NCBI RefSeq assembly: GCF_001194135.2
Contig: NC_068981.1
Span: forward strand, 4,627,781 to 4,686,464
Length of the DNA: 58,684 bases
Direction of reading: 5' to 3'
Source of the DNA: Octopus bimaculoides
Lineage: Eukaryota
Both the position numbers and the translations under genes were made by a program. Positions 2,246-41,447 of this stretch are shown piece by piece (position 1 is the stretch's first letter; every line of letters starts with the position of its first letter). Below the pieces are notes generated by a model, which saw only the letters and a list, made by a program, of their open reading frames with translations, did not search any database and was not told where the DNA came from.

Positions 2246-2436
2246 GAGATAAAGTTGATGAAATATTGATTTATTATTAGCAATATTTTCGTATTTTAAG
2301 AAACCGATATAATTGATTTGTAAAGGATAAAATAATGAATACAAATCAATATATAACCTATCGTATCATTATAATAAAATTCTTAGTTAATGTAATTATA
2401 ATTTTGCCACGGGCGACTTAGATTTTTCGTTCGTAG

Positions 2437-2637
2437 CATTGTCATAGAAGACTGGGTCTTCGGATTGTTCATTCTTGGTAATAACGTTGGTTAATTCATT
2501 TATTTAACTGCAAAAGTGTTGTTAATCCTTTATTTCTTGTTTAATTACGAAAATGACACGAGTTGTAGAAATATTTTTTACTTTAAATACCAGAATATCC
2601 AGAAGACATTGCGAGTGAGAGATGTCATCTCATCTAA
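2437..2637 (+). CDS. Candidate last two small coding exons (2437-2477, 2594-2637) of an unidentified gene
   Basis: AG/GT-bounded and phase-compatible, giving IVIEDWVFGLFILEYPEDIASERCHLI*. AATAAA at 2646-2651. No homolog recognised. Confidence 0.25.
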
Positions 2638-4639: not shown

Positions 4640-5005
4640 TATCATCATCATCATCGTTTAACGTCCGCTTTCCATGATAGCATGGGTTGGACGATTTGAC
4701 TGAGGACTGGTGAAACCAGATGGCTACATCAGGCTCCAATCTGATTTGGCAGAGTTTCTATGGCTGGATGCCCTTTCTAACGCCAACCACTCCGAGAGTG
4801 TAGTAAGTGCTTTTATGTGCCACCGGCACGAAGGCCAGTCAGGCGGTACTGGCAACGGCCACACTCAAAATGATGTATTTTACGTGCCACCTGCACAGGA
4901 GCCAGTCCAGCGGCACTGGCAACGATCTCGCTCGAATGTCTTTACATGTGCCACCGGCACAAGTGCCAAGAAGGTGACACTGGGCACAGGTGCCATCACG
5001 ATTTC
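4640..5005 (-). mobile_element. SINE family C (RTE-type 3' end with (GAT)n tail)
   Basis: catcatcat-cgtttaacgtccgctttccatg.tagcatgggttggacg... shared with 13735, 27590-27785, 35372, 38400-38825, 40665-40995 and 45290. Confidence 0.85.
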
Positions 5006-5179
5006 GCTATATATATATATATATATATATGGCGCGCTTCTTTCAGTTTCCATCTCCCAAATCCACTCACAAGGCTTTGGTCGGCCTGAGGCTATAGTAG
5101 AAGACACTTGCTGAAGGTGCCTCGCAGTGGGACTGAACCCAGAACCATGTAGTTGAGAAGTAATCTTCTTACCACCATT

Positions 5180-5372
5180 AGGAGTTTTGTAGGAAAATGG
5201 TTAAAATGTTTTTTTGTATTGTAGAAGTACAACCAATTTATTGCAGATAAATTTTGACACCAAAATCTTATATGGACCCCCAAAAGGTCATACGAACCCC
5301 AAAAGGTCATACGAACCCCAAAAGGTCATACGAACCCCCAAAGGTCATGTGGACCCTAGTTGAGAACCACTG
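5180..5372. mobile_element. One end of a hAT (Charlie/Buster-type) MITE with a 19-20 bp subterminal tandem repeat
   Basis: Ends in gttgagaaccactg followed by ttttagag (NTNTAGAN-like target). About 4 copies of ggtcatacgaacccc(c)aaaa at about 5270-5355. The other end was not found. Confidence 0.65.
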
Positions 5373-6044
5373 TTTTAGAGTCTTAGAAGTGAACACAGTG
5401 AAGGCAAAATAGGGGCCGCACTTTTATGTTTGTTTGTTCTGTTGGCCCACCCTGGTAAAAGAGACTGCGTTCATGGCAAGTCTTCACAAATTTCTGAGAT
5501 CAGTGACCTCTTGAACAGCCACTGCCAGAACGATGCAATATTTTAGGATTTATTAGAGGAGGTTGGCAGCATTTAAGATTACAGAAGCAACAAATGTTAA
5601 TAAAGGAGACTGTGTAATTAAAATTAATTACAATAATGGAAACTGCACATTTCAGATAGCCAAACATGAGTCACTGGGTTTCACTGAGTAGGAAATTTAT
5701 AATTATAGTTTAAATCTGACTCATTAAAAGGCAACAACAACAACATCATCATCATCATCATTGTCATCAACAAAATCATCATCACCATTATTGTCATCAC
5801 CATCATCATCATTGTTTAATGACCACTTTTCCATGTTTGCATGAATCAGATGGAATTTTCTGAGACAGATCTACAACTGGATGCTCTTCCTGTCACTAAT
5901 CTTCGTCTGTTTCCAAGCAAGGTAATATTTCCCTTTGGATAGACATGTTTTCACAGAAGATTGAAAACAAAGGCTGTCACTTGTATGATGGCAAGGCTCG
6001 TATACAAACATCACATAATGTCAAGACAAGGAGACACACACATG

Positions 6045-6063
6045 CACCACCACCACCACCACC

Positions 6064-6139
<76 letters not shown>
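6045..6139. repeat. Compound (CAC)n(CAT)n microsatellite
   Basis: Read directly from the sequence. Confidence 0.98.
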
Positions 6140-6311
6140 ATGTCTGTCTCCCATGCTAGCGCGTACACACACACACATCATGGGCTTCTTTCAGTTTCCG
6201 CCAGCCAAATCCACTCACAAGTCTTTGATTGGTCCAGGGCTACAACAGAAAACACTTGCCCAAGGTGCCATGCAGTGGGGCTGAACCCAGCACCATATGG
6301 CTGAGAATTAA

Positions 6312-6684
6312 ATACCAGCAGATGACAACGTTTCCCTAAAAGAAATGGAGAAACTTTCAAAATACAAAGACCTGGAAATAGAGGTAACTTGAATGTGGAA
6401 TCTAAAAACAGAAACAATTCCTGTCATAGTAGGTGCCTTAGGTATAATAAAAAAATATTCAGACAAATACATAACAAAAACACCAGGACTTACAAATATA
6501 TATAACATACAGAAAATTGCACTACTGGGCACTGCACACATCCTACGCAAAACACTTTCAATACAGTAACCATAAGAGCACCACAGCAAACCACAGCACA
6601 TACCCAAGGCACACAGAGCTGCGCTCGGTAGTGAAGTGAAAGCACGTTATAAAAATAGAACTACTGAATAATAATAATAATAAT
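6312..6684 (+). pseudogene. R4/Dong-like non-LTR retrotransposon 3' end: restriction-like endonuclease C-terminus, 3' UTR and (TAA)n tail
   Basis: IPADDNVSLKEMEKLSKYKDLEIEVT*MWNLKTETIPVIVGALG...IQKIALLGTAHILRKTLSIQ*. One internal TGA. (TAA)n at about 6668-6684. Confidence 0.85.
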
Positions 6685-6951
6685 CTGTACTGCCCAAGAA
6701 CAAGCATTAAGAATGAATTACATCAAATACAGAATAGACAACACATCAGAAAGCGATAAGTGCAGAATTTGCGGACAAAATGGTGAAACCATATGGCATA
6801 TTACCAGTCAATGTACGCCATTAGACCAGAAAGAATATAAGAGACAACATGACAATATAGCAAGGATTGACAATTGGACACTTTGCAACAAGTACAGACT
6901 TGACAGAGCAAAAAAGTGGTACGAACATAAATCCGAAGGCATCATCGAAAA
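6685..6951 (+). pseudogene. R4/Dong-like CCHC zinc-knuckle fragment
   Basis: AQEQALRMNYIKYRID...DKCRICGQNGETIWHITSQC...EYKRQHDNIAR...KWYEHKSEGIIEN, flanked by (TAA)n on both sides. Confidence 0.85.
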
Positions 6952-7059
6952 TAATAATAATAATCCTTTCTACTATAGGCACAAGGCCTGAAATTTTGGG
7001 TGACACATGTCACGCACACATGGTTGTGATGCATGTACCTGGTGTACCCTTATCAGACG

Positions 7060-7330
7060 AGTAGTCATGCTTGAATGGTGCTTTTTACGTGCCACCAGCA
7101 CAGGAGTCAGTCAGGCGGCACTGGCAACGACCACACTCGAATGGTGCTTTTTACATGCCACTGGCATGGTACCACTCAGCCAGCAGTGGCATCAACCACA
7201 CTTGAATGGTGCTTTTTATGTGCCACTGGCATGGGAGCCAGTCAGGCGGCACTGGCAACAATCACGCTTTAATGGTGCTTTTAACGTGCCACTATCATGA
7301 GTGCCAATCAGGCAGTACTGTCATCGGCCA
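7060..7330. repeat. Internal variable tandem repeat of SINE family C
   Basis: About 4 units beginning gaatggtgctttt(t)a.gtgcca. Confidence 0.75.
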
Positions 7331-7769
7331 CGAGAACGATTTCAAATTTTGGCACAATTTCAGGGGAGGGAATAAGTCGATTACATCGACACCCAGTGCT
7401 TGATTGGTCCTTCTTTTATTGTCCCTGAAAGAATAAAAGGCNNNNNNNNNNNNNNNNNNNNNNNNNNNNNNNNNNNNNNNNNNNNNNNNNNNNNNNNNNN
7501 NNNNNNNNNNATTTCAGTCATGACCATGCTGTCATTTTAAGAATAAGAAGGACTACATTCTCTAATATATATCCATTCCTTTCCCAAGACAACAGAATGT
7601 ATGATGGAGATTTGGCTGCTATTTCTGGCAAACTAAGCAACTACACAGAGCAGTGATTCTCACCCTTTTCAATATCTGGGCCAAATCCCAAACCTGGATT
7701 TCTGGTGGGGCGAGGGGACTGCACCAGAAAATTTTGAGCTGAGTGGGGGTGCTAGATTCCCTTGTTCAA

Positions 7770-7890
7770 AAATATAAGGACACAGATCATGTCATATAGC
7801 CAGCTGGAGATGATGTCTCCTGGGGCTAAATTACAGTAACATTAGTCCTAAACCAGGACTGCAATGTTATGTTGGCAAACAAACTTTACT
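7770..7890. mobile_element. One-armed copy of the long-TIR MITE seen at 26219-26398
   Basis: gccagctggagatgatgtctcctggggctaaattacag...cctaaaccaggactgc is the reverse complement of 26240-26320. Confidence 0.75.
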
Positions 7891-8845
7891 ATAAAGTACT
7901 TTTGCTTTCCTTCATTGGACACTAAACTCCACTTGCGAAGACCTGTTGAAGCAAGTGAAATCGAAATCGAAATAAATTCGACTGGCACCCATGCCTATGT
8001 TGTCTACTTCATTGGACACGAAACTCGGCTTGCGAAGACCTGTTGGGGCATTCTTGGCACTTGTGCCGGTAGCACGTGTAAAGACATTCGAGCGAGATCG
8101 TTGCCAGTGCCGCGGGACTGACTCCTGTGCAGGTGGCACGTAAAATACACCATTTTGAGCGTGGCCGTTGCCAGTACTGCCAGACTGGCCTTCGTGCTGG
8201 TGGCACATAAAAGCACACACTACACTCTCGGAGTGGTTGATGTTAGGAAGGGCATCCAGCTGTAGAAACTCTGCCAAATCAGATTGGAGCCTGGTGCAGC
8301 CTTTAGGTTCCACCAGTCCTCAGTCAAATCGTCCAACCCATGCTNNNNNNNNNNNNNNNNNNNNNNNNNNNNNNNNNNNNNNNNNNNNNNNNNNNNNNNN
8401 NNNNNNNNNNNNNNNNNNNNNNNNNNNNNNNNNNNNNNNNNNNNNNNNNNNNNNNNNNNNNNNNNNNNNNNNNNNNNNNNNNNNNNNNNNNNNNNNNNNN
8501 NNNNNNNNNNNNNNNNNNNNNNNNNNNNNNNNNNNNNNNNNNNNNNNNNNNNNNNNNNNNNNNNNNNNNNNNNNNNNNNNNNNNNNNNNNNNNNNNNNNN
8601 NNNNNNNNNNNNNNNNNNNNNNNNNNNNNNTTTGGTTGCTTTTTCGAGAAGGTCAAGTGACCGCATACAGGCTCCCTCATTAATTTGTATCCATGGAAGT
8701 TACATTAAAATCCTAATGAACACATTTAATTAAATCTGTGAAAATGTTATATTAACTGAACATGGTAATAAAAAAAATGCAATAACTGGTTCAAGAATTG
8801 CAAAATAATGGCAGAATTTGGTAAAAATTCATTTTGTTACCACTT

Positions 8846-9135
8846 TTAACCCTTTTGTTACCATATTTCTGTTGAAACACTGCTTTTGTTTCAATTAATT
8901 TTGAAAATGAAGAAGAAACTCGTCATTATTAAACTGGTGTTTGGAATAGAACACAAAATTTTGATGGAAGGTTTTTAGATCACTTTAACCCTTTTGTTAC
9001 CATATTTCTGTTGAAATACACTGTCTTTGTTTCAATTAATGTTGAAAATAATGAAGAACTTAGGGAAACAACTTTTGTCATTATCAAGCTGGTGTTTTGA
9101 ATATATAAGCTAGCATGGATGGTTTTAATTAAGAT
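8846..9135. repeat. Two head-to-tail copies (about 139 bp) of a dispersed TTAA-CCCTTT-initiated repeat
   Basis: ttaacccttttgttaccatatttctgttgaaa at 8846 and 8985. Related copies at about 37360-37510 (reverse) and about 51870-52110. Confidence 0.75.
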
Positions 9136-9236
9136 CAACTTGTTTCAGGATAACATGAAATACATTAACTGAAAGTTTAAACACACACAATAAATAAATA
9201 ATACAAGACAGAAACAAAATAAATATTTTCGTTAAT

Positions 9237-10289
9237 TTATTTCTTTGAAAAATACTTATCCAAAGTCATTTGTGTTCCGTTTTTATTGTTTTCTTTCATT
9301 TTCTCTGCATGAATCTGTTTGTAGCAAGACAGTACATTGTCCAAGTTCTGCTGAACTTTTGTTCTTCTTTCAATGTTAGGGTCAATATCCATTATTAACT
9401 GCTTGAATTTTTCAAATTCTTGAAACATTGTATCAAGTCCTTTTACAGTAATTTCTATCTTTTGTTCTTCATCTTTATCGTCTGCTTGACCGACTGCTTT
9501 TTTGTACATACACTCTCGACTTAAATTAAGGAGTTCATCATCACTTAATCCTTTTGAATGAGGTTCAAACAAATCCTCATCGTTTCTATTGTCTTTTTCA
9601 TCAAAATCAAGCAAAGGTTGTGGTTTTTGTATATTTTCTTTCTTTATTAAAAACGTTTTCGAAGGCATTTTTACCCAATATAAGTTCATTTCATCAGTAT
9701 TAAATAATTGTTTGTCATCGTAATCTCGTTCTTCAATTATTTTTTTAAAAGTGTTTGGATCTTTGTCTCTTGTATATTTGTCTACACATCCAGCCTCCCC
9801 TGTTATACGAACATTGTGAATCCCTGTCCGAGTTTTAAACCTCTCAAACCAACCAGAACTAGCAGTAAAAGTCTCTTTCATTTCTGCTGCTGTTAGAATT
9901 TCATTTTCTTTCATTAAATTTCTTTTAATTGCAGAGAAAATATTTAAAGCTTTCATTTTAATAGTCATAGTGTTTAGAGGAATTTGCTTAAGGTTGCAAT
10001 CTTCAATCCACAAAGACAAAAGATGCTCCATTTCAATCATAATCCGACTTCTATTCCTTGTTGTTTGCAGACCCAAAGTTGACGCCACTTTACCTTTTTC
10101 CTTATAGTCATCAATTTTCTTTAGAATTGCTCTCACAGTCGACTCATTCATTCCTAAATCTCGTCCTATTTTTGCTTTACTTTCACCACGTTCATGCCTT
10201 TTTATAATTTCCAATTTACTATCCAGAGTTAACACTTTCCTCCTCCTCTTAACACCAGAATTAACCTCATCAATCTTTCTTTTATCCAT
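9237..10289 (-). CDS. Tigger/pogo (CENP-B/TIGD-like) transposase-derived protein, 350 aa, lacking the DDE core
   Basis: Uninterrupted ORF from ATG at 10289 (the ORF track starts at an upstream TTG). N-terminal HTH (RRRKVLTLDSKLEIIKRHERGES...IGRDLGMNESTVRAILK), CENP-B/Tc5 HTH (MEHLLSLWIED...KALNIF...FTASSGWFERFKTR), start of the DDE domain (LFNTDEMNLYWVKMPSKTF), then a direct jump to the Tigger C-terminal region ending QMTLDKYFSKK. Confidence 0.8.
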   Translation of the reverse strand: MDKRKIDEVNSGVKRRRKVLTLDSKLEIIKRHERGESKAKIGRDLGMNESTVRAILKKIDDYKEKGKVASTLGLQTTRNRSRIMIEMEHLLSLWIEDCNLKQIPLNTMTIKMKALNIFSAIKRNLMKENEILTAAEMKETFTASSGWFERFKTRTGIHNVRITGEAGCVDKYTRDKDPNTFKKIIEERDYDDKQLFNTDEMNLYWVKMPSKTFLIKKENIQKPQPLLDFDEKDNRNDEDLFEPHSKGLSDDELLNLSRECMYKKAVGQADDKDEEQKIEITVKGLDTMFQEFEKFKQLIMDIDPNIERRTKVQQNLDNVLSCYKQIHAEKMKENNKNGTQMTLDKYFSKK

Positions 10290-10543
10290 AATTAAGGTCA
10301 AATTACATTTAGTACTTTAATGTCTATCACTGTACAAATGGAAGTTAGAATGATTTACATAAAAACACTATAAAATGGCGACTAACCTCCACACCACACT
10401 AACAGCTAAATATATTGTTCCAATTCATAAGTCATGTGACCTTTAAGTTGTTCTCTATTACATCTACATGACAATGTATAAATATATATATACTGCATCA
10501 GTATATAAAACCGTGCAAATTCAAAGCCATGATAATTAAAGGT

Positions 10544-10913
10544 TTATTACCTCTGCCTTAGTAAAGGCAGAGGTATTGTTTGCAGTCATGTTTGTTTGTC
10601 TGTTTGTCCGTGGACAAGATATCTCAAGAACTGCTGGATGGATTCAGATGAAACTTTCAGGGATGTTTGGCCTTGTGACTGGCACAAACTGATTAGATTT
10701 TGGGATCGATCCAGTACCAGACAAGGATTCTGGATTATTTTTCCTGATTTTTACTTAAATTTTTTAGAGCAGTCGGGTTCATTTTTAGTATTCTCGTTTG
10801 TGAGAGCAGTCGAGTTTTCAGCTATTCTCATTTTAAAAATCATCTCTGGCCAATCGTTGAGAGGACGTTGGTGTTGTCTTGGCGGAGGTTTGCACTCTCT
10901 GAGTGCTCTTGTT
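10544..10913 (+). mobile_element. Non-autonomous Helentron-type element (HINE/DINE-1-like)
   Basis: 5' ttatt-ACCTCTGCC-ttagtaaa-GGCAGAGGT hairpin, then a (GTTT/GTCT) microsatellite. 3' GGCGGAGGT subterminal IR plus GCACT-ctctg-AGTGC hairpin and tcttgtt end. Confidence 0.8.
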
Positions 10914-12399
10914 ATTTCTGCATTATTGAAATATATCTGAACTATATACTAAGGGTAGATAACTTTTCAGGGTTGAAGTATTTAGGGGTTTTGTTAAGAT
11001 CACGTGAAATATTTTAGGGTTTAATTGTGGCACCAGATTCATGAACCTGTATCAAATACTTCTATTATTTCTCTCAAGAATCTGTCATCACGACATGAAA
11101 ATCTGGAAAACAAAAAGAAAAAGCAGAATAATATTAAAATATTAACCATTAATCATTTACATAAAAAATAAAAACTTATAACCTAAATTTAAACAGGCGT
11201 GGCTGTGTGGTAAGAAGTTTGCTTTCTAAACACATGGGTCCAGGTTCAATCCTACTACAAAGCACCTTGGGCAAGTGTCTTCTATTATAGCCTTGGGAGT
11301 GGATTTGGAAGATGGAAACTGAAAGAAGCCTGTCATATATCTGTATGTATGTTTCTTTGTTTGTCTCCTACTACTGTTTGACAACTGGTATTGGTGTGTT
11401 TATGTCCACATAACTTAGTGGTTTGGCAAAAGAGACCAACAGAATAGGTACTATTCTTTAAAAAAATTAGCACTGGGACTGTGTTCAACTAAAACACGTC
11501 TGGAATTAGCTAAGAAAAAGTGCCAGGTTTTGGGGTACTTATAGCAGACATTCACTTGGGACCATAATAATATGGTTCCATACTAAATCTTGGAATATGC
11601 CACATTTAATGAGTGCCAAGGAGACTATTAACCGTTTTGATACCAACCCATCTGAGACTGCCGCTGTTCTATGATAGAAACTTTCAGTTTTAAAAGGATC
11701 TAAATTAAAAGTTTGTTATAGAAGAGATTATGGAGGCCACACACAATAGGAAACAGACTGAGCCTCAACAGAAAGCCTGGAGTGATAACCCCACCTCCAT
11801 TCTACCCCACTCCCACCCTGCAACCCAAGGATCGGAAACTGTGGTATGACATCAGCAACTGGGGAGCTGACCGCTGACCGTAACCGTGAACTGACCAGAA
11901 GAGGAAGAGGGGAAGAGGGAGCCTCGATGGGGATTTCGTGCTTTTTTTCAAGCGAGGTTGTTGTGACGAGAGGACGTGCGAGGCAGCTGCTATTTCTAGC
12001 GTTTTTCGGGTCAGGCCAGGCACGAGGACAGGATCCCACAGGACAGACTCGTGTGGTGGAAGGGAAACAAGGTAAGCCGATTACTTCTACTTACTTGCAT
12101 ACACCACAGAAACAAAATAGGGAGAAAAAAGGGAACAGGGTAATATATGAACCGATATACACACACAAGACACACATACACATAGCAAAAACATAGATCC
12201 CCCACACAGATAGGAATACATACCACAGAAAGAGAAAATGGAATATGAGACAGGAGAAGACGAGAGAGAGAAGAGGAGACATGGAGATGAACAGGTAGTC
12301 ATTGAAGAGATCACAGAAGGTGTGATGGAAGAATTCTGATGGGCAAACTAATAATAATTGAAAGAAATGTTATTTAGTTTACCTATCAGAGTTCTACTA

Positions 12400-12606
12400 A
12401 AGGCAGAAACCTGAAATTTGAGGGGAGGGAGGGGCTAGTTGATTACATCGACCCTAGTATGCAACTGGTACTTAATGTATCGACCCCCAAAAGGATGAAA
12501 GGCAAAGCTGACCTTGGCGGAATTTGAACTCAGAATGTAAAGACAGGCAAAATACCACCAAGCATTTCGATAGGCCTGCTAACCACTCTGCCAGCTCATT
12601 GCCTTA

Positions 12607-12646
<40 letters not shown>

Positions 12647-12890
12647 GTAATAATAATAATATCAATAAGAATAATAATCCTTTCTACTATAGGCACAAGG
12701 CTTGAAATTTTTGGGGAAGGGACTAGCTGATAACATCGACCCCAGTGTTTTACTGGTACTTAATTTATCGACTCTGAAAGAATGAATGGCAAAGTCGACT
12801 TTGGTGGAATTTGAACTCAGAACGTAAAGACGGAAGAAATACCACTAAGAATTTTGCCCAGCATGCTAACGATTCTGCCAGCTTGCTACC

Positions 12891-12934
<44 letters not shown>

Positions 12935-12943
12935 TTATTCTTT
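12400..12943 (-). mobile_element. Two tandem SINE family B copies (tRNA-derived head) separated and flanked by (TAA)n
   Basis: Minus strand reads gctggcagaatcgttagc...gttctgagttcaaatt (A/B-box-like), body aagtaccagt...ggggtcgat, and tail ccttgtgcctatagtagaaaggattattatt. Confidence 0.85.
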
Positions 12944-12944
12944 T

Positions 12945-13600
12945 ATTAGCCACAAAGGCTCACATACTAAAACATTAAATGACATACAACAAGATAAAAT
13001 ATAAAAACAGGACAATACAATGGGTTTTCCGCACGTACACAATATAATAACAATAAAAATTAAACAAATTAAAACTTCCAATAGGGGAGGCGCTTTAAGG
13101 TCCTTGTGGAAAAACCCACAAAAATCCACAGATGCCTGATCAACAGGACAAGAGCCCTTTTCCTGAGATTCCCTTTTTACAGGTGCACACTCAGAATTGG
13201 TCCTTTCACATTGGCCATTCTTCCAGCATTCACCCACCTTTCAACAAACTTGCTACAAGGCAACACTTCCCTCTCTCCACCTTCAACTTCCTTTTCAAGT
13301 GAAATTTGAAAAAGTTGAAGAGGGCTTGGCCAAAGTGGAAAGTGTCTGTCTTTAGCCCTTTCAAACGGATCCACCATACTACCTCTTTCCCTACAGCCAT
13401 GAGACAAATAAAAATTGCCTGCTACAGCCACTAGACAAATAAAAAAAACCTAATCCTGGCTGAAAGAGGGCGGTGGGGCAATCTTCACAATGGATTCAGC
13501 TGATAGCTGGATCCGTCCTACACACGACAGCTGGTGTTCAACATAAACCCACAGGTCAATAATACTCGGGCACTGGACTAGGGCGTGCAGACCGTAATAA
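12945..13600 (-). pseudogene. Tx1-like LINE 3' end, decayed
   Basis: Across frameshifts: ...QLLSCVGRIQLSAESIVKI...VVWWIRLKGLKT...FFKFHLKRKLKVEREVLPCSKFVERWVNAGRMANV*, then an AATAAA-containing 3' UTR. Confidence 0.7.
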
Positions 13601-14082
13601 TAATAAACCACTCTGTGTGTCTAAAAGCAAAGATCAATAAATGATATTTGTGTTTACGTGTAAAATGACAGTCCCCAAATATGAAAATTAATTAAAACTG
13701 TCTTCCATCAAAATTTTATGCTAATTTCATCATCATCATCATCACCATCATTATCATTTAACGTCCGCCTGCCATGCTGGCATGGGTTGGACAATTTGAC
13801 AGAAGCTGGCAAGCCAGAGAGCTGCACCAAGTTCCAGTATCAGCTTTGGCATGATTTCAATGGCTAGATGGCCTTCCAAACCTCAACCTCTTTACAGAGT
13901 GTACAGGGTAATTTTTACGTGGTACCAGCACCAGTGGGGTTGCCAAGTAACCTGAGGCAAAAAGCCTCTCAGCTGGGAGAGGGAGTGGAACCAAGAGAAG
14001 TGACTTGTACCAGGTGAGGGGTTAGAATATAATCCTTTCTACTGGAAAGGATTATGTAGAGTTTATCCCAGCAGTGAAAAGG

Positions 14083-14191
14083 GGCGAAGGTAAAGAATAT
14101 GCACACCCGGTGGTTAGGGTTAGGCTTAGGGTTAGTTTTAGGGTTAGGTTTACACTGAAAACGGGTGGTGTATGTAATCTCTACCTCCGCC
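14083..14191. mobile_element. Small degenerate TIR element with a TTAGGG-like core
   Basis: Left arm ggcgaaggtaaagaatatgcacacccg versus reverse complement of right arm ggcggaggtagagattacatacaccacccg. Degenerate TTAGGG units at 14113-14148. No clear TSD. Confidence 0.5.
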
Positions 14192-14805
14192 AAGAAAGAA
14201 GAAAGGAAAGAGAGGAAGGTAGGAGAGACAGAGACAGTCAAAGTGAGAGAAAGTGTTGGAGCGGCATCGGGGACCTACCTACAAGGAACAATGGGAGAGG
14301 GGGATCCTTTTATATTTAAAAAGCCATTAAATATAACTGAGTCCCTTAAACCCTTTTAAATTGAGGTTTCTTCAAATGGTTTGTGGCCCCTAAATTTAAC
14401 GGGACTCTTTATTATCTCATTACGTTTAGAATCTGCAATCGTAAAAGATCCCACCCCCCAGCCAACTGGCTCAGGGGCCCCACTAGGTCTTAGTCTGGTC
14501 CTACACATATACCTGTCTATCTTCACATATACTTATCTATCTCTACATAAAATCTTATAAACACACACACACATGTACGCACAATATAAATAAATATTCT
14601 ACACGTCAAATGTTACCAATGTGATCGAAGTCAATTGCTTGACCCTTCCTGATTAAATTTATTGATTTTAAAATAGAAAGAGGAATTTAAATGTTGTGGC
14701 CTTCATTCAGCCCCCAAAGTTACTTTGAAATATTATTTCCCAAAACTTCGACAACAAAAAGAAACATTTTGTTTACATATTAATGGCACAGAAATATATA
14801 CATAC

Positions 14806-14851
<46 letters not shown>

Positions 14852-16221
14852 TTTGGCACGTATGTACATTTAACCCAGAATTGCGAGCACTTCTAACACT
14901 TATACATATACGCACATACACGGACGTAGATGTTAATCAAAACACAAATTAAAATATTTTATAAAAATTTCTGTAAATTAACTAATTAATTGATATATAA
15001 ACATAATTTTGTTGGATAATTTAGGTGAGTAAAAATCTAAAACACGAAAATGCTTTAACTCATCATTGATCAACCAAAGCATATTCATAACACAAAAAAA
15101 TAACACCCTCATCGGTTAATTATTACTAATTATTAACTAATTAATTCTGTTAGATAAAGCGAAAACACTGTTTAAATATAACTATATGAACCTTACTCAC
15201 TCACCTTAGCCTCAATCCATGTCTGTCGGAATAGATGTCCCACCGGCACTGCTGCTATGGCTAACAACATATATACAAATATATATACAATATTATACAC
15301 ACACAAGACATAGAATGGAAAGGTCCCATATAAAATACCATTTAGTTATTAATGTTGATGTTTGTTAATATCAGACCAGCCCTGGTCGACGGCTGTGATT
15401 ATAGAATATAGCTTAACGGGTTACATTATAATGGGTAGACGCGATTTCAAGACAGTAGACTGTTGTTTGAGGCTCATTTGACTGTTATTTCTAGCAGGCC
15501 ATTTCACTTGTTTGGTGTTCACAGTAAACAATAAAGGAACTCAAATAAGAACAGATTATGGATATTTAATTGGCCGTTTCAATAACCTCAACTTAGTCGT
15601 CGTATGTAATTAATTTATTGCAAAATGTAGGGCAGTTTATGACATGAATCAGTGAAGTGTTTATAATTAAATCCATTGTTGGTATTTAATTGCTTCCGTT
15701 TCAATTCTTATCTGGACTATCTTTGCTTTTCCATCCCACCGAGGCCGATCAAATAGAATGAAATAGTGGAATAAATTATATATGGTGCACAACTTTAATT
15801 AAAACTATAACAGATATCGGGGAAAAGTTTGTTTCTATAGTCACAAATTATGTGTAAAAGTCTTAAACCAAAAAGTAGAGGAATTCTTGGGTCCTCTTCC
15901 TTCGCCATAATCTCGATAATAAAAGTTTTAAATTATCTGAGATTTTTATAAAACATAGCAATTTATCTGCGCCTTTTCAATCCTCCCAGCTTATTTCGCC
16001 CACCAACACTTCCATCGGAAAGATTTGGTTTGACCATATTGTGTTGACGGCCAATGGGCTGAAACAAGTATAAAGTTATCCCTAGGATTCGAAACCTGGA
16101 AATTCGAAGTATTCTCAGTTGTATTGAATTATCTCCCTTCTCTTTAAGGATTTCTAACAATTGCCGCTAGGTTTAAATTTTCTCCAACTAAAAGGAAAAT
16201 TTCAGAATGTGAGGGCGAGAA

Positions 16222-16256
<35 letters not shown>

Positions 16257-16801
16257 AACCTCTACTCTTTTACTTGTTTCAATCATTTGACTGCGGCCAT
16301 GCTGGAGCTCCGCCTTTAGTCGAGCAAATCGACCCCAGGACTTATTCTTTGTAAGCCTAGTACTTATTCTATCGGTGTCTTTTGCCGAACCGCTAAGTTA
16401 CGGGGACGTAAACACACCAGCATCGGTTGNNNNNNNNNNGGGGGGGGGGGGACATTAACTTAATTTGTTGAATAATGATTAATTCAATTTTAAAACTAAA
16501 AAAAGCGGAATGAATAATTTACCGTCAATCAGTTGAAAATATTGCACTACATCATCATCAATCATCTTCGACATAATCGTCGTTTTCGATCAGTCACCAC
16601 CAACGCCATTTTCATCAATCATCACCATCGCTCATCACTCCCGCCACAATCATTGCCAATCAATTATCGTTGTCAATTATCATTACTCATCATCACCAAT
16701 CAATCATTAATCATCACTCATCAGCAGTGCTGACATTACTATCAGTCATCACTCCCTCCACTACTATCATCAATCAATCCTCAGCATCAACCACCGTCAC
16801 C

Positions 16802-17233
16802 AAGCATTCCTTCAGAGATGGTATCACGAAAGAGAAAATGAAAATCGTTATTTTATCGATTTGTTTGGCAATTTCCGTGAAAAAATATTTATTAAAAATT
16901 TTTTTCGACTGAACAGTGAGACAGTCACACACACACACCCCACGAGGGAGTTGAGAAAATACACTCAGACTCACTCACACGCACAAATATATATAGAACA
17001 CATAGATACATAAGCATTCGTTTTTTTTCCTGTTTTCACGAATTATCTACGTTTATGCATTTTTTGTGTATATGTATGTATGTATGTACGAGTGTGTGCG
17101 CATGTGTGTAGCTGAGTGTAAGCTGGAAAAAAGCCCTTTAAAAGATATAAAGGAATTTATGGAAATTGCCGAATAGATAAAACAGAATGATTTTCATTTT
17201 CACTTTCGTGATACTATCTCCGAAGAAATGCTC
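16802..17233. mobile_element. Unclassified long-TIR MITE, copy 1
   Basis: About 75-bp imperfect TIR gcattccttc(a/g)gagatggtatcacgaaag.gaaaatgaaaat...ggcaatttcc, microsatellite-rich interior. Confidence 0.75.
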
Positions 17234-17429
17234 CATCATTTTTACATCAACTTTTTCCGTGAGACTTTCATGAGGCTGTACTCTATAGCCAGATGCCCTT
17301 CCGAATGCCAACCTTTACTTGTTGTTCAAATAAGGGGCTTAATTCCACGTCCTTATACATCTGTGGTTGGACATTTTGTTTATGCAAGATTAATGAACCA
17401 AACAGGACATCCCTATACCTGAAGGAGAA

Positions 17430-17810
17430 TTATTAGTTTGTCCGTCAATGTTGATAATCAAGGACATCACTTGATAGAAGAAGACGGGACACGATGTGTC
17501 CAGCTGTGGCCAATCAGTCCGAATCGTGCTCGGGGGGGGGGGGCTCAGCCACAAGTCCGGCACTGTGGTCTGCTGGGACTGAAGACAAGGATTTCGCTCC
17601 AGACTTGCATGGTTTGCATTTTCTTTGTACCCCTGCAAACCTGTTCCGTTCATAGAAGGCAGCACCTCTGTCGGTGCACCTTTGCCAGGCAGGGCAGCCT
17701 TGAGCTTGCCTTTCCCAAGTGTCGGGGTAATTCTCATAGCTCTACAGTGAGGTTTTGAGTGTGTCCCTGAAGCGCTTTTTCTGTCCACCTTGGGTGTACT
17801 GCAGGAGAAT
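17430..17810 (-). pseudogene. RTE-BovB-like LINE 3' end
   Basis: TQGGQKKRFRDTLKTSL*SYENYPDTWERQAQGCPAWQRCTDRGAAFYERNRFAGVQRK, a typical RTE C-terminus. Confidence 0.8.
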
Positions 17811-18221
17811 AGGGGACAGAAAAGAAGAAAAAAAAGAGAGAAGGTGAAATAGAGGAAGCGTGATTTTAGGAAAGTTGATGAGAAGCAGTGAAGTACTCAA
17901 TACGAACAGAGTGCAGTGGCTTATTTTAACTGGTGCAGTCAGACTTGGTTGCACGCTATGGAGACTGCAGAGTAACAGACCACTGGACCAGCTTAAATGA
18001 AACTATGCACACACACACACACACTCACATACATGCATGTTTGCATGTGTTTCCAATTTGACACTTGTTATACTTAAATCTCCAGTACACAACTAAATAC
18101 CATCCGACTTTAAGCTCTAAAAACAGGAAAAGAAATTATAATATACATTTACAAGATGTTTAAGTAGTGTAGTTCACACAGAAAATTCATATAATATGGA
18201 ATACCAGCATGTAAACATGAT

Positions 18222-18456
18222 GGGCATTCCTTCGGAGATGGTATCACGAAAGTGAAAATGAAAATTGTTTTATTTATTTGTTTCGCAATTTCCTAAAGAT
18301 TTTTTTTATTTCTTAATATTTTTCCAGCTCACACACACACCTATACATACAAAAATATATATACATATATATACATACACCATATATATACATACACCAT
18401 ATATATACATAAACATAAGCGATTCGGGAAAACATTAAAAAAGATGTACGTGTATT

Positions 18457-18515
<59 letters not shown>

Positions 18516-18732
18516 GCTTGTGTGTGTGTGCTTAACTGTTCAACTCGCTCGTGGACATGAAGACAATATGTGTATGTACGTGTGTGCGTACGTACGTGTG
18601 CGATCGTGTATTTCACTGTTCAGCTGAAAAAATATGAAAGAAATATGTTTTTTACGGAAATTGCCGAACGAGCAGATCATACAGAACGATTTCCATTTTC
18701 ATATTCGTGATACCATCTCCGAGGGAATGTCC
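18222..18732. mobile_element. Unclassified long-TIR MITE, copy 2 (inverted relative to copy 1)
   Basis: GGGCATTCCTTCGGAGATGGTATCACGAA ... TTCGTGATACCATCTCCGAGGGAATGTCC. Asymmetric internal segments are reversed versus 16802-17233. Confidence 0.75.
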
Positions 18733-19844
18733 ACATTGTGTGCTTACATCGCTCATACTTACACCCCACCCCCGTGTACACACAACGATCTTGTTCATAT
18801 ACACACACATACACACAAGCGCGCCTGCACTTGACACACTCATACCACAAGACTCACACAGGCACACATACACACAGAAACACACACACACATATACGTA
18901 CAGATGAATGAGAACACCGACAATTTACAGAAGCACATAGAAGTTTAAAATACGCACGTCTATTTTGATGTTATTGTTGAGATTAACGGATAAATCACCT
19001 GTATTTTTTTTGTTTTTTGGATTTGTTTTTCGCTTCGTGTTATATTATAACTTGAAGAAGCTATCCAGAGTGAAATAACTGCCACTACACAATAAATGCA
19101 TACTTATATATGCATCTATAGCTATAGCTATCTTATTTCATATATATATACATGTGTGTGTGTGTGTGTTCTTTTTATATATTAATGTATTCTGTAGAAG
19201 GTAGCCGGATGCCCCAGCAAGCTAAACTCGAAAATGACAACAGCCTGTATTTAGTAGGCGTGGTTCCCTTTTCACTCATCCTCTACTCACAACAACGGAG
19301 CGTCATATTCGATAGTTTTAGAAATAAATCTTTTGACTTTTATAAATAGATGTTACACAGAAAAATATAACAAAATTTGACCTCGAATGAATGGGAAACA
19401 ACAAAATACAGTGCAACTCTCTCAGTCATACACACTCTCTTTTTCCCTCTTTCACACAGGCCTTCAATGAATGCGGGTGAGGTGAGGTGTTAGTCGGTTA
19501 TATCTACCCAAGTACTTTAAGAGTAATTTATTTTATTGATTCTGTAAAGTTAATCTCGATGGAATTTGAACCCAGAACGTAAAGAGTCAGAAGAAAAACG
19601 GCAAGGTATTTTGTCCAACGCTGTAACGATTCTGCCAAATCCACCGCTTTTGATCATGGCACAAGGCCAGCAATTTGAAGAGGCAAGGGTTAGCCGATAA
19701 ACCTTGATTGTTCTATTTTATCGACCACGGAAGGATGAAAGGCAAAATTGACCTCAAACTCAGAGTAAAACGCCGGAACAAATACTGCAAAGCAACTGGT
19801 CCAACACTCAATCGATTCTACCAATCTACCACACTTAGAAAGTG

Positions 19845-19958
19845 AAGAATCGACCCATTACAAGACTGATCTTGTCAAGACTGGTAGGATAAGAGGAAGA
19901 GTCGACCCATTACAAGACTGATATTGTCAAGACTGGTAGGATAAGAGGAAGAGTCGAC
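19845..19958. repeat. 52-bp tandem duplication inside a SINE B remnant
   Basis: tcgacccattacaagactgat.ttgtcaagactggtaggataagaggaagag at 19850 and 19902. Confidence 0.9.
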
Positions 19959-20062
19959 ATGAGCGGGATTTGAACTCAGAATGCAACTGCATTGCATTAT
20001 TCTGATCTTCTAACGATTTGGTCCAATAATTTATAAATAATTTGCAGGAGTACTCAGTAATT

Positions 20063-20691
20063 GGGCGGAGGTAAAGTACATGGACTGCACCCCCTTTCGG
20101 TTAGTTTTTTTTTTCTACAGAAATCCACGTTTTCGACTGCAGAAATTCCGAATCTGCAAAAAAAAAAATCGGCATTTCAAAATTTTAATCCCCCCCCCCT
20201 TTTNNNNNNNNNNNNNNNNNNNNNNNNNNNNNNNNNNNNNNNNNNNNNNNNNNNNNNNNNNNNNNNNNNNNNNNNNNNNNNNNNNNNCCATCCTACTAAA
20301 ATAGCGTAAAAAAGTATCTAAACAGAAAACTCGACTTGCTAGACATAACAGCTAAACGACGAATCACGTTTTCAAAATTTTAATTTCCCCCACCCCACTT
20401 TTTTTCTCTGCCAGAGTGGTGGTGGTGGTGGGGGGAATTAAAATTTTGAAAACGTGTTTTGGGGGTTTTCAAAATCTTTAATCTTTATGTACGCTCCAAC
20501 TGGAAAGTCCGACAAGCTAGAAACAACAGCCAAACCGAAGATCCACTTTCTAAATACGAATTACCAAAAAAGAAAAAAATTCATATTTTGAAATGCCGAT
20601 TTTTTTGTTGTTGCAGAATCGGAATCTCCGCAGTCTAAAATGTGTGTTTCTGTAGAAAAGGGGGTGCGGTCCATGTCCTTTACCTCCGCCC
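20063..20691. mobile_element. MULE/Mutator-like MITE with long TIRs
   Basis: Roughly 105-120 bp imperfect TIRs starting GGGCGGAGGTAAAG. 9-bp flanks tcagtaatt / tcaatactt (7/9). Internal hairpin at 20365-20456. Contains an N gap. Confidence 0.7.
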
Positions 20692-38390: not shown

Positions 38391-39529
38391 GACATACATA
38401 TGTTAAAAGCACATCCGAGTGTGACCGTTGCCAGGGCCACAGATTGGCTCCTGTGCCAGTGACACGTGAAAGTATCATTTGAGCCTGATCGTTGCCAGCT
38501 TTGCCTTTCTGGCACATGTGCCAGTGGCACGTAAAAAACAACATTTAAGCGTGGTCGTTGCCAGTGCCGCCAGACTGGCTCCCATGCAGGTAGCACGTAA
38601 AAACACCTTTTCAGTGTGGTTGTTGCCAGAACCGCATGACTGGCACATAAAAAGCATCCACTACACTCTCGGAGTGGTTGGCGTTAGGAAGGGCATCCAG
38701 CTGTAGAAACTTTGCCAGATCAAATTGAGCCTGGTGCAGACTCTGGCTCTCCAGACCTAAGTCAAACAGTCCAACCCATGCCAGCATGGAAAGCGGATGT
38801 TAAACGACGACGATGATGATGATGATACACATCTACAGATATGCAAACATCTTTCCATATAATTACCTGTCTTATTCTGTTTACAATAACAACATGCAAT
38901 TATCATATTACGGGGTTAGCTAAAACGTTATTTCTCTCTTCTGCCGTATAAATGTTTCAATATGACAAGCACGATAACACTTATGTTTTCCAATACAATT
39001 AATAAATAAATACGTATGTAAAATACAACTATTCGAAAATGACAAATACATGAAAAAACAAAACAATTAATTGTTGAGTATTTCATGTTTAAGACCGCAG
39101 CTTCTTATCGCTACCTCTCACTTCTACCTAATTGCTTGGAGCAAACTAGAAAAAAAAAAGAAAAGAAAAAGAAAGAAAGAAAGAAAGAAAAGAAAGGCAG
39201 ATTATTTTGTCGTGATGGTGTCATTTGTGAATGAAAATATCTTTTTAGCTCTGCAAGTAAGAAATTATTAACAACATTCCTGAACAATTAACAGACACCT
39301 TATTTACTGCACATAGTACTTTTTGCATTGGTCTTTTGACAAAAAGTAACAGCGACAATTAGACACCGGGAGAGACATACTTCTGGGATCTATGCCAATA
39401 TAATTGGGATGTATTAATCTGTCGTTGGTCCATCACGACTGGAAAACAATAGTGCTATGTTCATGGTGACAAAATCTGCCAACGGTTGGTGAATAAAATG
39501 AGAATGGAGATGCTAGAAAGGCTGCCTCA

Positions 39530-39646
39530 TTGTTCTGCAGTTGCCACCAAAAGCGACCTTTTTATAAGGCTCATTAGAAAGTTCTAGAAAGTTGAATCAC
39601 AGGATTGCTTGACACTGATTGGCGGATTAATTGGCTGATCACGTGA
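39530..39646 (-). promoter_or_regulatory. Candidate heat-shock-type Pol II promoter
   Basis: On the minus strand in order: CACGTG (39640-39645), CCAAT (39630-39634), CCAAT (39618-39622), HSE aGAAa-gTTCt-aGAAa (39576-39590), TATAAAAA (39566-39559). Lies in non-repetitive sequence. Confidence 0.6.
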
Positions 39647-41447
39647 AACGACAGTGGTTTAGCTGTGATGTTTACTTGGCTATTCAGTGATTCAGTTTTG
39701 AATCTGCTACAGTTTCAACAGAAATATGGTAATACATGGGTTAATTGAAAAGACGCAAAAGAGTCTTCAATCAAATAATTCATCTTTCTGTTTTGGTATT
39801 GGATAAATTCAAAAAGCTCCAAAACCATTTTAATTTTATCAGACACGGCAATTTTTCGGCTCCCTATTTAATTTCACTGCTTCCCTCTTAGTGGAAACTG
39901 TCATCTGTTTACAAATTTCTGGTGAAATAATTGCTTTTAATTTAGACACAAGGCCAACCATTTTGATACTATCAGCCCCAGTGCTTAAATGGTCTTTTAT
40001 TTTATCAACCCATGGCTTAGTGGTTATGGTAGTTGGCTCATGATCGTAAGGTCATGAGTTTGATTCCTAGGCAACACATTGTGTCCTTCAGCAACATACT
40101 TTATTTCATGTTGCTCCAGTTTACTCAGCCGACAAAACTGAGTGGTACCTGTAGTTCAAAGGTAGCCATGGCACATTCTGTGTCTCGCTGAATCTCCCTG
40201 AGAACTTCATTAAGAGTACAGGTGTCTGTGGAGTGCTCAGCCACTTGCACATTAGTTTCATGAGCAGGTTGTTCCATTGATCGGATCAACAGGAATTCTC
40301 GTCATCGTAATTGACGGAGTTCCACTTTTCTTTCATTCATTCTTTCTTTCTTTCTTTCTTTAAAAATTTTATCAACCCCAAAAGGATAAATGACAAAATT
40401 AATTGTGGCGGGATATGAACTCTGAAAGAAGAGAGCAGAGAGAAATACCACTGATAATTTTCTCAACATTCTAACGATTTTGCTAATCCTCCATCCTTGG
40501 TTTTCTGGGTTTGAATGGAATGGTAATTGCGTTGAAAGGTGGGTTGTTTGGAGAAATTTTTATTGATTAAATTTGGGCTTATGTTATTGATTAGAATCTA
40601 TTCATATATATATATTGAGTCAAGTACATCAAAATCAAAATCAAATGGAAATTGTAGTTGTGATCCCCGTGCCAGTGGTGCGTAAAAGGTACCATCCGAA
40701 CATGGCCAATGCCAGAGCTGCCTTGACTGGCTTCCGTGCTGGTGGAACATAAAAAGCACCAACTGATCGGGGTCGTTGCCAGCCTCCTCTGGCCCCTGTG
40801 CCGATGGCACGTAAAAACCACCTACTACGCTCTCGAAGTGGTTGGCATTAGGAAGGGCATCCAGCTGTAGAAACACTGTCAGATCAGACTGGAGCCTGGT
40901 ACAGCCTCCTGGCTTTCTGGACCCCAGTCGAACCATCCAACCCATGCCAGCATGGAAAAACGGACGTTAAACGATGATGACAATGATGATGATGATATAT
41001 ATAGAACTTTGTAAGCCGGTGTGCTTATTTAGGTGTGTCCCTCTTGACAGGTAGGTATAGGATAGGTCATTAGTTTTAGTTGTTCCTGGTTTTAGTGGAT
41101 TTAGTCATTTGCTTTGACAATGTAAAGCTCAAAGATATAAGATATTATTAGCCATAGATGCATGTAGAACCTTAGAACTTTCATAGTGGGGGCATGTAAT
41201 CTCTAACCCAAAACTGATGACTGAGTTTCACAGTGATGATGTTGATTTGTTGGTTTCCTTATCAATTACATTAATTGAATAATGAGGTCAGATCAAATGA
41301 CAGTACCCCATACCTACCCTGTAGCCACAAAAATTTGACACATTTGGAGAACACCTCAATCCTTCACAACTCCCTGCGAATATAATGATTGTCTAACGTT
41401 ATTTTAATTTAGTGTTTCCAGCCCCCCTACCCCCACGATTTTTAATC

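What the first reader, a model, noticed from the sequence alone, without database searches (positions are those of the whole stretch)
39375..39646. Textbook heat-shock promoter architecture with no annotated gene
Seen: within 90 bp on one strand, E-box TCACGTGA, two CCAAT boxes 12 bp apart, three perfect alternating nGAAn pentamers plus a near-match fourth, and TATAAAAA 10 bp further. Downstream lie a Kozak-like accATG (39464, 16-aa ORF), a second ATG (39433) and a donor AA|GTATGT (39380). Known: HSF binds inverted nGAAn arrays, and HSE+CCAAT+TATA is typical of hsp promoters. Inference: a stress-inducible transcript starting near 39535, encoding a small protein or a lncRNA.
Basis: partly seen in the sequence, partly recalled or inferred. 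Interest (0 to 1): 0.7.

Follow-up and report, generated by a model that had tools for sequence, protein, structure and literature searches.

The report
Orphan heat-shock-type promoter in octopus
A stretch of Octopus bimaculoides intergenic DNA really does carry every sequence motif of a classic heat-shock gene promoter, in the right order, but no heat-shock or small-protein gene follows it, so it is an untested orphan promoter candidate.

Summary
On the minus strand lie TCACGTGA (39646-39639), two CCAAT boxes (39634, 39622; the second is CCAATCAG), a perfect three-unit HSE (39589-39577; 11/12 over four units) and TATAAAAA (39566-39559).

Measured from an inferred start near 39536, these sit at about -110/-103, -98, -86, -53/-41 and -30. 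By chance I expect about 0.002 such clusters per window, or 5e-5 with the E-box. That still allows about 2-80 across a 2.3 Gb genome.

The segment is single-copy within the window, which is O. bimaculoides CM046601.1 at about 4.667 Mb.

- No HSP remnant, Pfam domain, protein homologue or Rfam family lies downstream.
- The exon-1 peptides match no database protein.
- The donor is ordinary (6/9 consensus), three upstream ATGs precede any open frame, and there is no poly(A) signal for 1.67 kb.
- There is no CpG enrichment and only one HSE.
- No expression or conservation data could be reached.

One new lead emerged. The next gene on the same strand, 29 kb downstream, is a conserved single-copy Tigger-derived DNA-binding gene. 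An O. vulgaris gene model reaches more than 9 kb upstream of its orthologue on that strand.

Best reading: an evolved, possibly stress-responsive orphan promoter making a non-coding RNA or leader (about 0.4). Rivals are chance (about 0.3) and a transposon-derived relic (about 0.2).

The parts
39639..39646 (-). Palindromic E-box TCACGTGA (USF/MITF-TFE type), about -110 to -103 from the inferred start
   Evidence: It is one of only two TCACGTGA sites in the window. The other, at 11000, is not kept in O. vulgaris.
39630..39634 (-). CCAAT box 1 (cagCCAATtaa), about -98
39615..39622 (-). CCAAT box 2 in the extended NF-Y form CCAATCAG, about -86
   Evidence: The NF-Y flank consensus is from my own knowledge.
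39576..39595 (-). Heat-shock element: perfect trimer nTTCnnGAAnnTTCn at 39589-39577, plus an upstream 2/3 unit (11/12 core matches over four units), about -59 to -41
39559..39566 (-). TATA box TATAAAAA, -30 to -23 from the inferred start
39381..39536 (-). Inferred first exon or leader. The start is placed at the CA at 39537/39536, 30 nt after the first T of the TATA box (inference only). It holds ATGs at 39530 (5 codons), 39464 (16 codons) and 39433 (open to the donor).
   Evidence: No transcript data were available.
39375..39380 (-). Candidate splice donor GAA|GTATGT (6 of 9 consensus positions)
   Evidence: It is not distinctive.
39713..39744 (-). 32-nt repeated motif TTAACCCaTgTaTTACCATATTTCTGTTGAAA, 66 nt upstream of the E-box. 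It also occurs in inverted orientation at 8846 and 8985.
   Evidence: 0 matches expected by chance, and the similarity ends after about 35-45 nt.
11039..11102 (-). Exon behind a strong acceptor (ttttccAG| at 11103). It is orthologous to the last coding exon of an 84-aa O. vulgaris gene model. It shows 5 nucleotide differences, which I read by hand as all non-synonymous, so it is probably a non-coding leader exon.
9237..10289 (-). Tigger-derived 350-aa ORF (CENP-B_N + HTH_Tnp_Tc5, no DDE domain). It is single-copy, conserved in three octopods, and is the next called gene downstream on the promoter's strand. An acceptor tacAG| at 10329 and a donor GAG|GTAATA at about 10556 lie upstream of it.
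8846..9016 (+). Two tandem copies (8846-8877 and 8985-9016) of the same 32-nt motif, in inverted orientation, just after the Tigger-derived ORF
   Evidence: One copy is kept in O. vulgaris with 1 mismatch.

Best explanation
The cluster is an evolved RNA polymerase II promoter module rather than a chance arrangement.

Proposed mechanism (inferred from motif positions, not shown):
- TBP/TFIID would bind TATAAAAA and set a start about 30 nt downstream, near 39536 on the minus strand.
- NF-Y would bind the two CCAAT boxes at about -86 and -98.
- A USF or TFE-type bHLH-ZIP factor would bind TCACGTGA at about -105. Together with NF-Y this would keep the promoter accessible and provide basal activity.
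- A trimer of heat-shock factor would bind the three perfect inverted nGAAn units at -41 to -53 during proteotoxic stress and boost initiation.

The RNA it makes does not encode a protein. It is either a stand-alone non-coding transcript or the 5' leader of a downstream gene.

The only concrete candidate target is the conserved Tigger-derived DNA-binding gene 29 kb downstream on the same strand. It would be reached through leader exons such as 11102-10556.

Shown: motif presence, order, spacing, non-randomness, single-copy status within the window, absence of coding potential, and the same-strand gene arrangement.
Inferred: factor binding, start site, heat induction, splicing and target.
For: Motifs and statistics:
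- All five motifs are present in the canonical order and spacing.
- Several match extended consensus forms: TCACGTGA palindrome, CCAATCAG and an 8-nt TATA box.
- The oriented cluster occurred in 0 of 300 simulations. The empirical expectation is 0.002 per window, or 5e-5 with the E-box.
- The 39197-40012 block has no other copy in the 58.7 kb window and is not related to the adjacent SINE.

Downstream context:
- The next gene on the same strand is a real, constrained, single-copy gene: 96% protein identity to O. vulgaris, a third octopod copy, and only 10 homologues in the database.
- That gene has a splice acceptor 40 nt before its ATG and an upstream donor, both kept in three species.
- In O. 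vulgaris a same-strand gene model ends 780 nt upstream of the orthologue and extends more than 9.2 kb further upstream, past the fetched locus.
- My reading from the sequences, not a tool output: the frame of ATG-39433, spliced at the 39380 donor, matches the annotated frame of that model's last exon. This has a 1 in 3 chance of happening anyway.
Against: - No transcript, CAGE or heat-stress data could be consulted.
- No orthologous sequence of the promoter itself could be fetched, so conservation is unknown.
- There is only one HSE array, whereas mollusc and insect hsp70 promoters usually carry several (PMC6337134).
- HSE-like arrays are common in this DNA: three 11/12 arrays in 58 kb, two of them at sites with no promoter context.
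- The initiator match at the inferred start is weak.
- CpG observed/expected is average: 0.56 against a window mean of 0.69.
- There is no AATAAA or ATTAAA for 1.67 kb, and the donor is ordinary.
- Downstream non-repeat ORFs have no Pfam domain and no homologue.
- The link to the Tigger-derived gene is positional only. That gene also has TATA-like sequence about 190 nt upstream of its own ATG.
- Genome-wide, 2-80 comparable clusters are expected by chance.
- A repeat-family motif abuts the block, so a transposon origin is possible.
Confidence: 0.4

Rival explanations
1. Chance cluster. AT-rich, HSE-rich intergenic octopus DNA happens to juxtapose short motifs. Nothing is transcribed from it and no factor uses it.
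For: - HSE-like arrays are frequent: 4 perfect trimers and three 11/12 four-unit arrays in 58.7 kb.
- About 2-80 equivalent clusters are expected genome-wide, and the motif list was defined after seeing the sequence.
- No gene, ORF homologue, RNA family, poly(A) signal or CpG signature accompanies it.
Against: - The per-window expectation is 0.002 to 5e-5.
- Several motifs match extended consensus forms.
- Order, orientation and distances all fit one start site.
Confidence: 0.3
2. Transposon-derived relic. The block is the 5' end of a low- or medium-copy mobile element (a solo LTR, or the inner side of a terminal repeat) that brought its own stress-responsive promoter. It is now inactive or only cryptically active.
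For: - The window is dense in transposon fragments. At least 27% is repeated within itself, and there are RT, DDE_3 and Mos1 HTH fragments.
- A 32-nt repeat-family motif beginning TTAACCC lies 66 nt upstream of the E-box, with inward orientation like a terminal repeat followed by a promoter.
- The block is bounded by a SINE at 40013 and a microsatellite at 39148-39196.
Against: - There is no second copy of the motif cluster in 58.7 kb, nor in 21 kb of O. vulgaris.
- The similarity to the other motif copies stops after about 35-45 nt.
- No transposase or RT remnant adjoins it.
- A related full-length pogo-type element has TA-CAGT... terminal repeats, not TTAACCC.
Confidence: 0.2
3. Promoter of an unannotated small-protein gene: the 16-aa ORF, or an ORF starting at ATG 39433 and continued by splicing.
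For: ATG 39464 and ATG 39433 both have a purine at -3, and the ATG-39433 frame stays open to a GT.
Against: - A 5-codon upstream ORF at 39530 comes first.
- No database protein shares three 5-mers with these peptides.
- Exact look-ups of spliced and unspliced products were negative.
- The only annotated coding exon it could join has 5 nucleotide differences between species, which I read by hand as all non-synonymous with none synonymous. That indicates no coding constraint.
Confidence: 0.03
4. Relic promoter of a decayed or displaced heat-shock protein gene.
For: The architecture is that of hsp70-type promoters (my own knowledge; PMC6337134).
Against: - tblastn with HSP70, HSPB1, DNAJB1, ubiquitin, HSP90 and HSPE1 finds nothing in the window.
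- Downstream ORFs have no Pfam domain.
Confidence: 0.03

Closest known systems
hsp70-type heat-shock promoters (Drosophila hsp70, vertebrate HSPA1A and Xenopus hsp70, mollusc HSP70 such as Haliotis diversicolor, PMC6337134)
   Same: - A proximal HSE of at least 3 inverted nGAAn units lies 10-20 nt upstream of a TATA box, which sits about 30 nt before the start.
- CCAAT (NF-Y) boxes lie at about -60 to -100.
- It is a TATA-type, CpG-poor, inducible design.
   Different: - No chaperone gene, and no coding exon at all, follows it.
- It has a single HSE array instead of the usual several; the Haliotis promoter has five HSEs and no CCAAT box (PMC6337134).
- It has an added palindromic E-box.
- Binding and induction are untested.
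Heat-inducible non-coding RNA genes (Drosophila hsr-omega, human satellite III transcripts; my own knowledge)
   Same: An HSF-driven Pol II promoter whose product has no conserved ORF.
   Different: - There is no sequence similarity: Rfam finds nothing.
- There is no tandem-repeat body downstream.
- Expression is unknown.
Stress-responsive transposon promoters (for example the HSE-bearing LTR of Arabidopsis ONSEN; my own knowledge)
   Same: A promoter with an HSE sits next to a repeat-family terminus in transposon-rich DNA.
   Different: - No second copy was seen.
- There is no LTR pair, target-site duplication or internal coding remnant.
Distal alternative promoters with long first introns feeding domesticated transposase genes (TIGD and CENP-B-like genes)
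   Same: It lies on the same strand as, and upstream of, a conserved Tigger-derived HTH gene that has leader-exon splice sites.
   Different: The 29 kb separation is bridged by no demonstrated splice junction.

Membership tests
HSF-dependent heat-shock promoter | At least three contiguous, alternately inverted nGAAn units | tested here: met
   TTCtaGAActTTC at 39589-39577, and 11/12 core matches over four units.
HSF-dependent heat-shock promoter | HSE placed proximally upstream of a core promoter (TATA box or start site) | tested here: met
   TATAAAAA begins 10 nt after the HSE. The start site itself is inferred.
HSF-dependent heat-shock promoter | HSF occupancy and heat-induced transcription | not testable with these tools
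   No ChIP, CAGE or RNA-seq data are accessible.
HSF-dependent heat-shock promoter | Drives a chaperone or stress gene | tested here: not met
   No HSP homologue or Pfam domain lies downstream or anywhere in the window.
HSF-dependent heat-shock promoter | Several HSEs within a few hundred bp (typical, not strictly defining) | tested here: not met
   The only other HSE-like site within 39 kb +/- 700 bp is a two-unit one at 39277, downstream of the start.
NF-Y (CCAAT) promoter | CCAAT pentamer with a favourable flank at about -60 to -100 | tested here: met
   CCAATCAG at -86 and CCAAT at -98. Binding is untested.
Interspersed repeat or transposon promoter | Multiple genomic copies of the segment | tested here: inconclusive
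   It is single-copy in 58.7 kb and absent from 21 kb of O. vulgaris. The whole genome was not searchable. A 32-nt flanking motif is repeated three times.
Small-protein (micropeptide) gene | An ORF with homologues or coding constraint | tested here: not met
   No homologue, no exact record, and the candidate joined exon changes 5 of 20 residues between species (my own comparison).
Known structured or annotated RNA family | A match to an Rfam covariance model | tested here: not met
   No hits at gathering threshold over the whole window, and only microsatellite artefacts at E<=1. No tRNA genes.

The most novel reading that the evidence does not exclude
The heat-shock-type promoter is the distal promoter of the conserved, domesticated Tigger-derived DNA-binding gene 29 kb downstream. 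It would be spliced across a transposon-filled leader intron. The inverted 32-nt TTAACCC... motif just upstream of the promoter and just after the ORF would mark relic ends or binding sites of the ancestral element. This would make it a stress-inducible, possibly self-regulating domesticated transposase-derived regulator in cephalopods.
Probability: 0.1. Interest if true: 0.55.

Novelty: new member of a known kind. Interest (0 to 1): 0.3.

Why it matters
If active, this would be an unannotated stress-responsive transcription unit in a cephalopod genome, where promoter architecture and the heat-shock regulon are barely characterised.

It would also be a compact (about 120 bp) native inducible promoter candidate for octopus reporter constructs.

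If it feeds the Tigger-derived gene, it would link a domesticated transposase DNA-binding protein to the stress response.

If it turns out to be chance or a transposon relic, it is a useful calibration point. A textbook-perfect motif array can sit in gene-free DNA, and HSE-like arrays occur about once per 20 kb in this genome.

Tried and rejected
1. Intronless or nearby HSP gene. No long ORF, and tblastn with six HSP-class proteins written from memory found nothing.
2. Coding exons downstream. 67 non-repeat minus-strand ORFs from 20000-39560 gave no Pfam hit and no database protein.
3. Exon-1 peptides. No shared words with any database protein, and exact look-ups of spliced products were negative.
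4. Structured RNA, snoRNA or miRNA host gene. Rfam and tRNA scans were empty.
5. Repeat within the window. None found for the motif cluster.
6. Retroposon sharing the neighbouring SINE's 3' region and (TTTC)n tail. The 21-nt similarity is not significant (45 of 300 shuffles reach it), and other SINE copies lack that tail.
7. Homology between this E-box and the only other TCACGTGA, at 11000. That site is CACATG in O. vulgaris and is not constrained.
8. The TTAACCC motif as a pogo/Tigger terminal repeat. A related full-length element has TA-CAGTCATCCC... terminal repeats instead.
9. CpG-island signature. Absent.
10. Fetching orthologous promoter DNA:
   - Metagenome pattern scans found nothing.
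   - Exact look-ups of 10 ORFs around the promoter were all absent.
   - The O. vulgaris locus reaches only to window position of about 20006.
   - The representative search using the leader-exon peptide found only an irrelevant tandem-repeat ORF.
11. Reconstructing the O. vulgaris 84-aa model. There is no two-exon solution in L002 or in the window, and only microsatellite junk turned up.
12. A mariner-fragment ORF as a handle on gene calls near the promoter. It is not on record.

Full report
**Source and setting**

The window is Octopus bimaculoides assembly GCA_001194135.2, chromosome CM046601.1. It has the same orientation as the record, and record position = window position + 4,627,780. 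The inferred start at 39536 is therefore about 4,667,316.

The window is AT-rich (39% GC), contains seven assembly gaps and is dense in repeats. At least 27% of it is repeated within itself. It holds many microsatellites, tRNA-derived SINE copies, and weak RT, DDE_3 and Mos1-HTH fragments.

**The observation**

Reading the minus strand and scanning for motifs confirms each element:

| Element | Position | Distance from inferred start at 39536 |
|---|---|---|
| E-box TCACGTGA | 39646-39639 | -110 to -103 |
| CCAAT 1 | 39634-39630 | -98 |
| CCAAT 2 (CCAATCAG) | 39622-39618 | -86 |
| HSE TTCtaGAActTTC | 39589-39577 | -53 to -41 |
| TATAAAAA | 39566-39559 | -30 to -23 |

The start is placed at the CA at 39537/39536, 30 nt after the first T of the TATA box. 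This geometry is what a TATA-type NF-Y/HSF promoter looks like.

Three corrections apply:
- The fourth HSE unit is the upstream tCAAc (11/12 core matches over four units). It is not the out-of-register downstream GAg.
- The donor GAA|GTATGT matches only 6 of 9 consensus positions. Two other GT sites within 670 nt score 7 or 8 of 9.

**Chance**

Three-unit HSEs are common here, with four sites against about 0.84 expected. There are three 11/12 four-unit arrays. One of these lies in a transposon ORF at 43024 and one at 52707. A perfect trimer also sits inside a mariner ORF at 48226.

The oriented combination HSE + TATAAA + at least 2 CCAAT never arose in 300 simulated windows. From the window's own motif frequencies it is expected 0.002 times per window, and 5e-5 times with CACGTG.

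Scaled to 2.3 Gb, that is about 80 and about 2 chance cases. The cluster is clearly non-random for one window. Chance is not excluded genome-wide, the more so because the motif list was chosen post hoc.

**Is it a repeat?**

The block 39197-40012 has no other copy in the window, even with sensitive settings. It is bounded by a microsatellite (39148-39196) and a SINE starting at 40013. A suspected relationship to that SINE's 3' region is not significant.

There is one exception. A 32-nt motif, TTAACCC.T.T.TTACCATATTTCTGTTGAAA, lies 66 nt upstream of the E-box (39744-39713, minus strand). It recurs twice in inverted orientation at 8846 and 8985, with none expected by chance. Similarity stops after about 35-45 nt. 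Genome-wide copy number could not be measured with the collections available.

**What lies downstream**

There is no long ORF of HSP type and no tblastn match to HSP70, HSPB1, DNAJB1, ubiquitin, HSP90 or HSPE1.

I concatenated all 67 non-repeat, non-low-complexity minus-strand ORFs of at least 28 aa between 20000 and 39560. They gave no Pfam family at E<=1 and no protein at E<=0.01 among 5.8 billion clusters.

The candidate exon-1 peptides share no three 5-mers with any database protein. Rfam and tRNA scans are empty.

No AATAAA or ATTAAA occurs for 1.67 kb after the inferred start. CpG observed/expected is 0.56, which is average for the window.

The 'small protein' reading is therefore unsupported. 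If there is a product, it is non-coding RNA or a leader.

The only gene on record in window -763..20289 is a 350-aa ORF at 10289-9237, on the same minus strand. It carries CENP-B_N and HTH_Tnp_Tc5 domains and no DDE domain.

It is not a multicopy transposon:
- Only 10 database proteins match it.
- One is a 96%-identical O. vulgaris orthologue, CAI9715745.1.
- A copy from a third octopod is about 87% identical at the DNA level.
- There are 42%-identical 323-aa proteins in marsupials.

The O. vulgaris locus L002 is colinear with the window.

Upstream of the ATG lie an acceptor (tacAG| at 10329) and a donor (GAG|GTAATA at about 10556), both kept in three species.

In O. vulgaris, a same-strand 84-aa gene model ends 780 nt upstream and runs more than 9.2 kb further, past the fetched locus. 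Its last coding exon uses the strong acceptor at window 11103. Between the species that exon differs at 5 nucleotides. I read all five by hand as amino-acid changing (5 of 20 residues), with none synonymous. Meanwhile the flanks are 96% identical. It is therefore probably a leader exon rather than a real CDS.

This means a spliced transcript on this strand plausibly originates upstream of window position 20006, and the motif cluster at 39.5 kb is a candidate origin. By my own reading of the sequences, the frame of ATG-39433 spliced at 39380 matches the annotated frame of that exon; this has a 1 in 3 prior.

I could not retrieve the 84-aa protein or the O. vulgaris sequence further upstream, so the link remains positional.

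**Interpretation**

I commit to an evolved Pol II promoter module with a functional-looking HSF site that makes a non-coding RNA or leader (confidence about 0.4). About a quarter of that weight goes to the link with the Tigger-derived gene.

The rivals are:
- a chance cluster (about 0.3);
- a transposon-borne relic promoter (about 0.2), favoured by the abutting repeat motif and the transposon-rich setting;
- a micropeptide gene or a relic hsp promoter (about 0.03 each).

The idea that the 32-nt motif is a pogo-type terminal repeat is not supported. A related full-length element has TA-CAGTCATCCC... termini.

**Comparison with known systems**

The cluster works like an hsp70-type promoter. It fails the membership feature 'drives a chaperone gene', and it has one HSE rather than several. 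For comparison, Haliotis HSP70 has a TATA box at -27 to -32, five HSEs and no CCAAT box (PMC6337134).

It is at most a new member of a known kind, and it is unvalidated.

**Verdict**

Interest is modest (0.3). The decisive data are transcript 5' ends with and without heat, genome-wide copy number, and cross-octopod alignment. All are cheap to obtain but outside these tools.

Noticed in passing
window 9237-10289 (-); L002 10001-11053; L003 381-1433: A 350-aa Tigger/pogo-derived ORF has CENP-B_N and HTH_Tnp_Tc5 domains but no DDE domain. It is single-copy and conserved: 96% identity to O. vulgaris CAI9715745.1, plus a third octopod from SRR11869391. Its next-closest relatives are 42%-identical 323-aa proteins in marsupials (Antechinus, Sarcophilus, Gracilinanus). 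It looks like a domesticated transposase DNA-binding gene with an odd phyletic distribution.
   Followed up: partly
window 39713-39744 (-), 8846-8877 (+), 8985-9016 (+); L002 11272-11303 (-): The 32-nt motif TTAACCC.T.T.TTACCATATTTCTGTTGAAA occurs three times in the window, with none expected by chance. The copies are in inverted orientation on either side of the promoter-to-Tigger-gene interval. One copy is kept in O. vulgaris with 1 mismatch. TTAA+CCC resembles a piggyBac-type terminus, but no partner end or transposase was found.
   Followed up: partly
L002 1-9223 (+), orthologous to window 11039 up to beyond 20006 (-): An O. vulgaris 84-aa multi-exon gene model lies upstream of the Tigger-derived gene. 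Its last exon differs from O. bimaculoides at 5 nucleotides, all amino-acid changing by my own comparison, with no synonymous change, while flanking non-coding DNA is 96% identical. The CDS is therefore probably spurious and the exon a non-coding leader.
   Followed up: partly
window 43024-43043, 48226-48238, 52707-52726: Other perfect or 11/12 HSE arrays have no promoter context. One encodes TFQKFL at the end of a retroelement-like ORF, one lies inside a mariner ORF, and one is in unique DNA. HSE-like arrays occur about once per 20 kb here.
   Followed up: yes
window 4411-5176, 7771-8344, 27592-28606, 35371-35642, 37920-38827, 40666-41038, 45247-45773: An abundant repeat family has 65-66-bp internal tandem sub-repeats (7070-7320, 38426-38648, 45458-45714) and a recurrent pseudo-ORF (...GCTRLQSDLAEFLQLDALPN...). 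At least seven copies lie in 58.7 kb, and two of them flank the promoter block in the same orientation.
   Followed up: no
window 40013-40328 (+), 53589-53861 (+), 56622-56832 (+), 30493-30648 (-), 21371-21550 (-): Copies of a tRNA-derived SINE. Only the copy next to the promoter block is followed by a (TTTC)n tract (40327-40361). That tract forms an inverted pair with the (AGAA)n at 39148-39196.
   Followed up: partly
window 14112-14152 and 55938-55976: Short interstitial telomere-like hexamer arrays: (GGTTAG)n and (CCTAAC)n.
   Followed up: no
window 46860-47502 (+) and 47811-48570 (-); 29339-29620 (+); 6713-6988 (+): Degenerate Tc1-like (weak DDE_3) and mariner (Mos1 HTH_48) transposase fragments lie back to back. 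Weak LINE-type RT and zf-RVT fragments lie elsewhere. All score below the Pfam gathering thresholds.
   Followed up: partly
window 7442-7510, 8345-8630, 16430-16439, 20204-20287, 42384-42574, 44097-44222, 57867-58128: Seven runs of N (assembly gaps). None lies between 20288 and 42383, so the promoter block and its 19 kb downstream are gap-free.
   Followed up: yes
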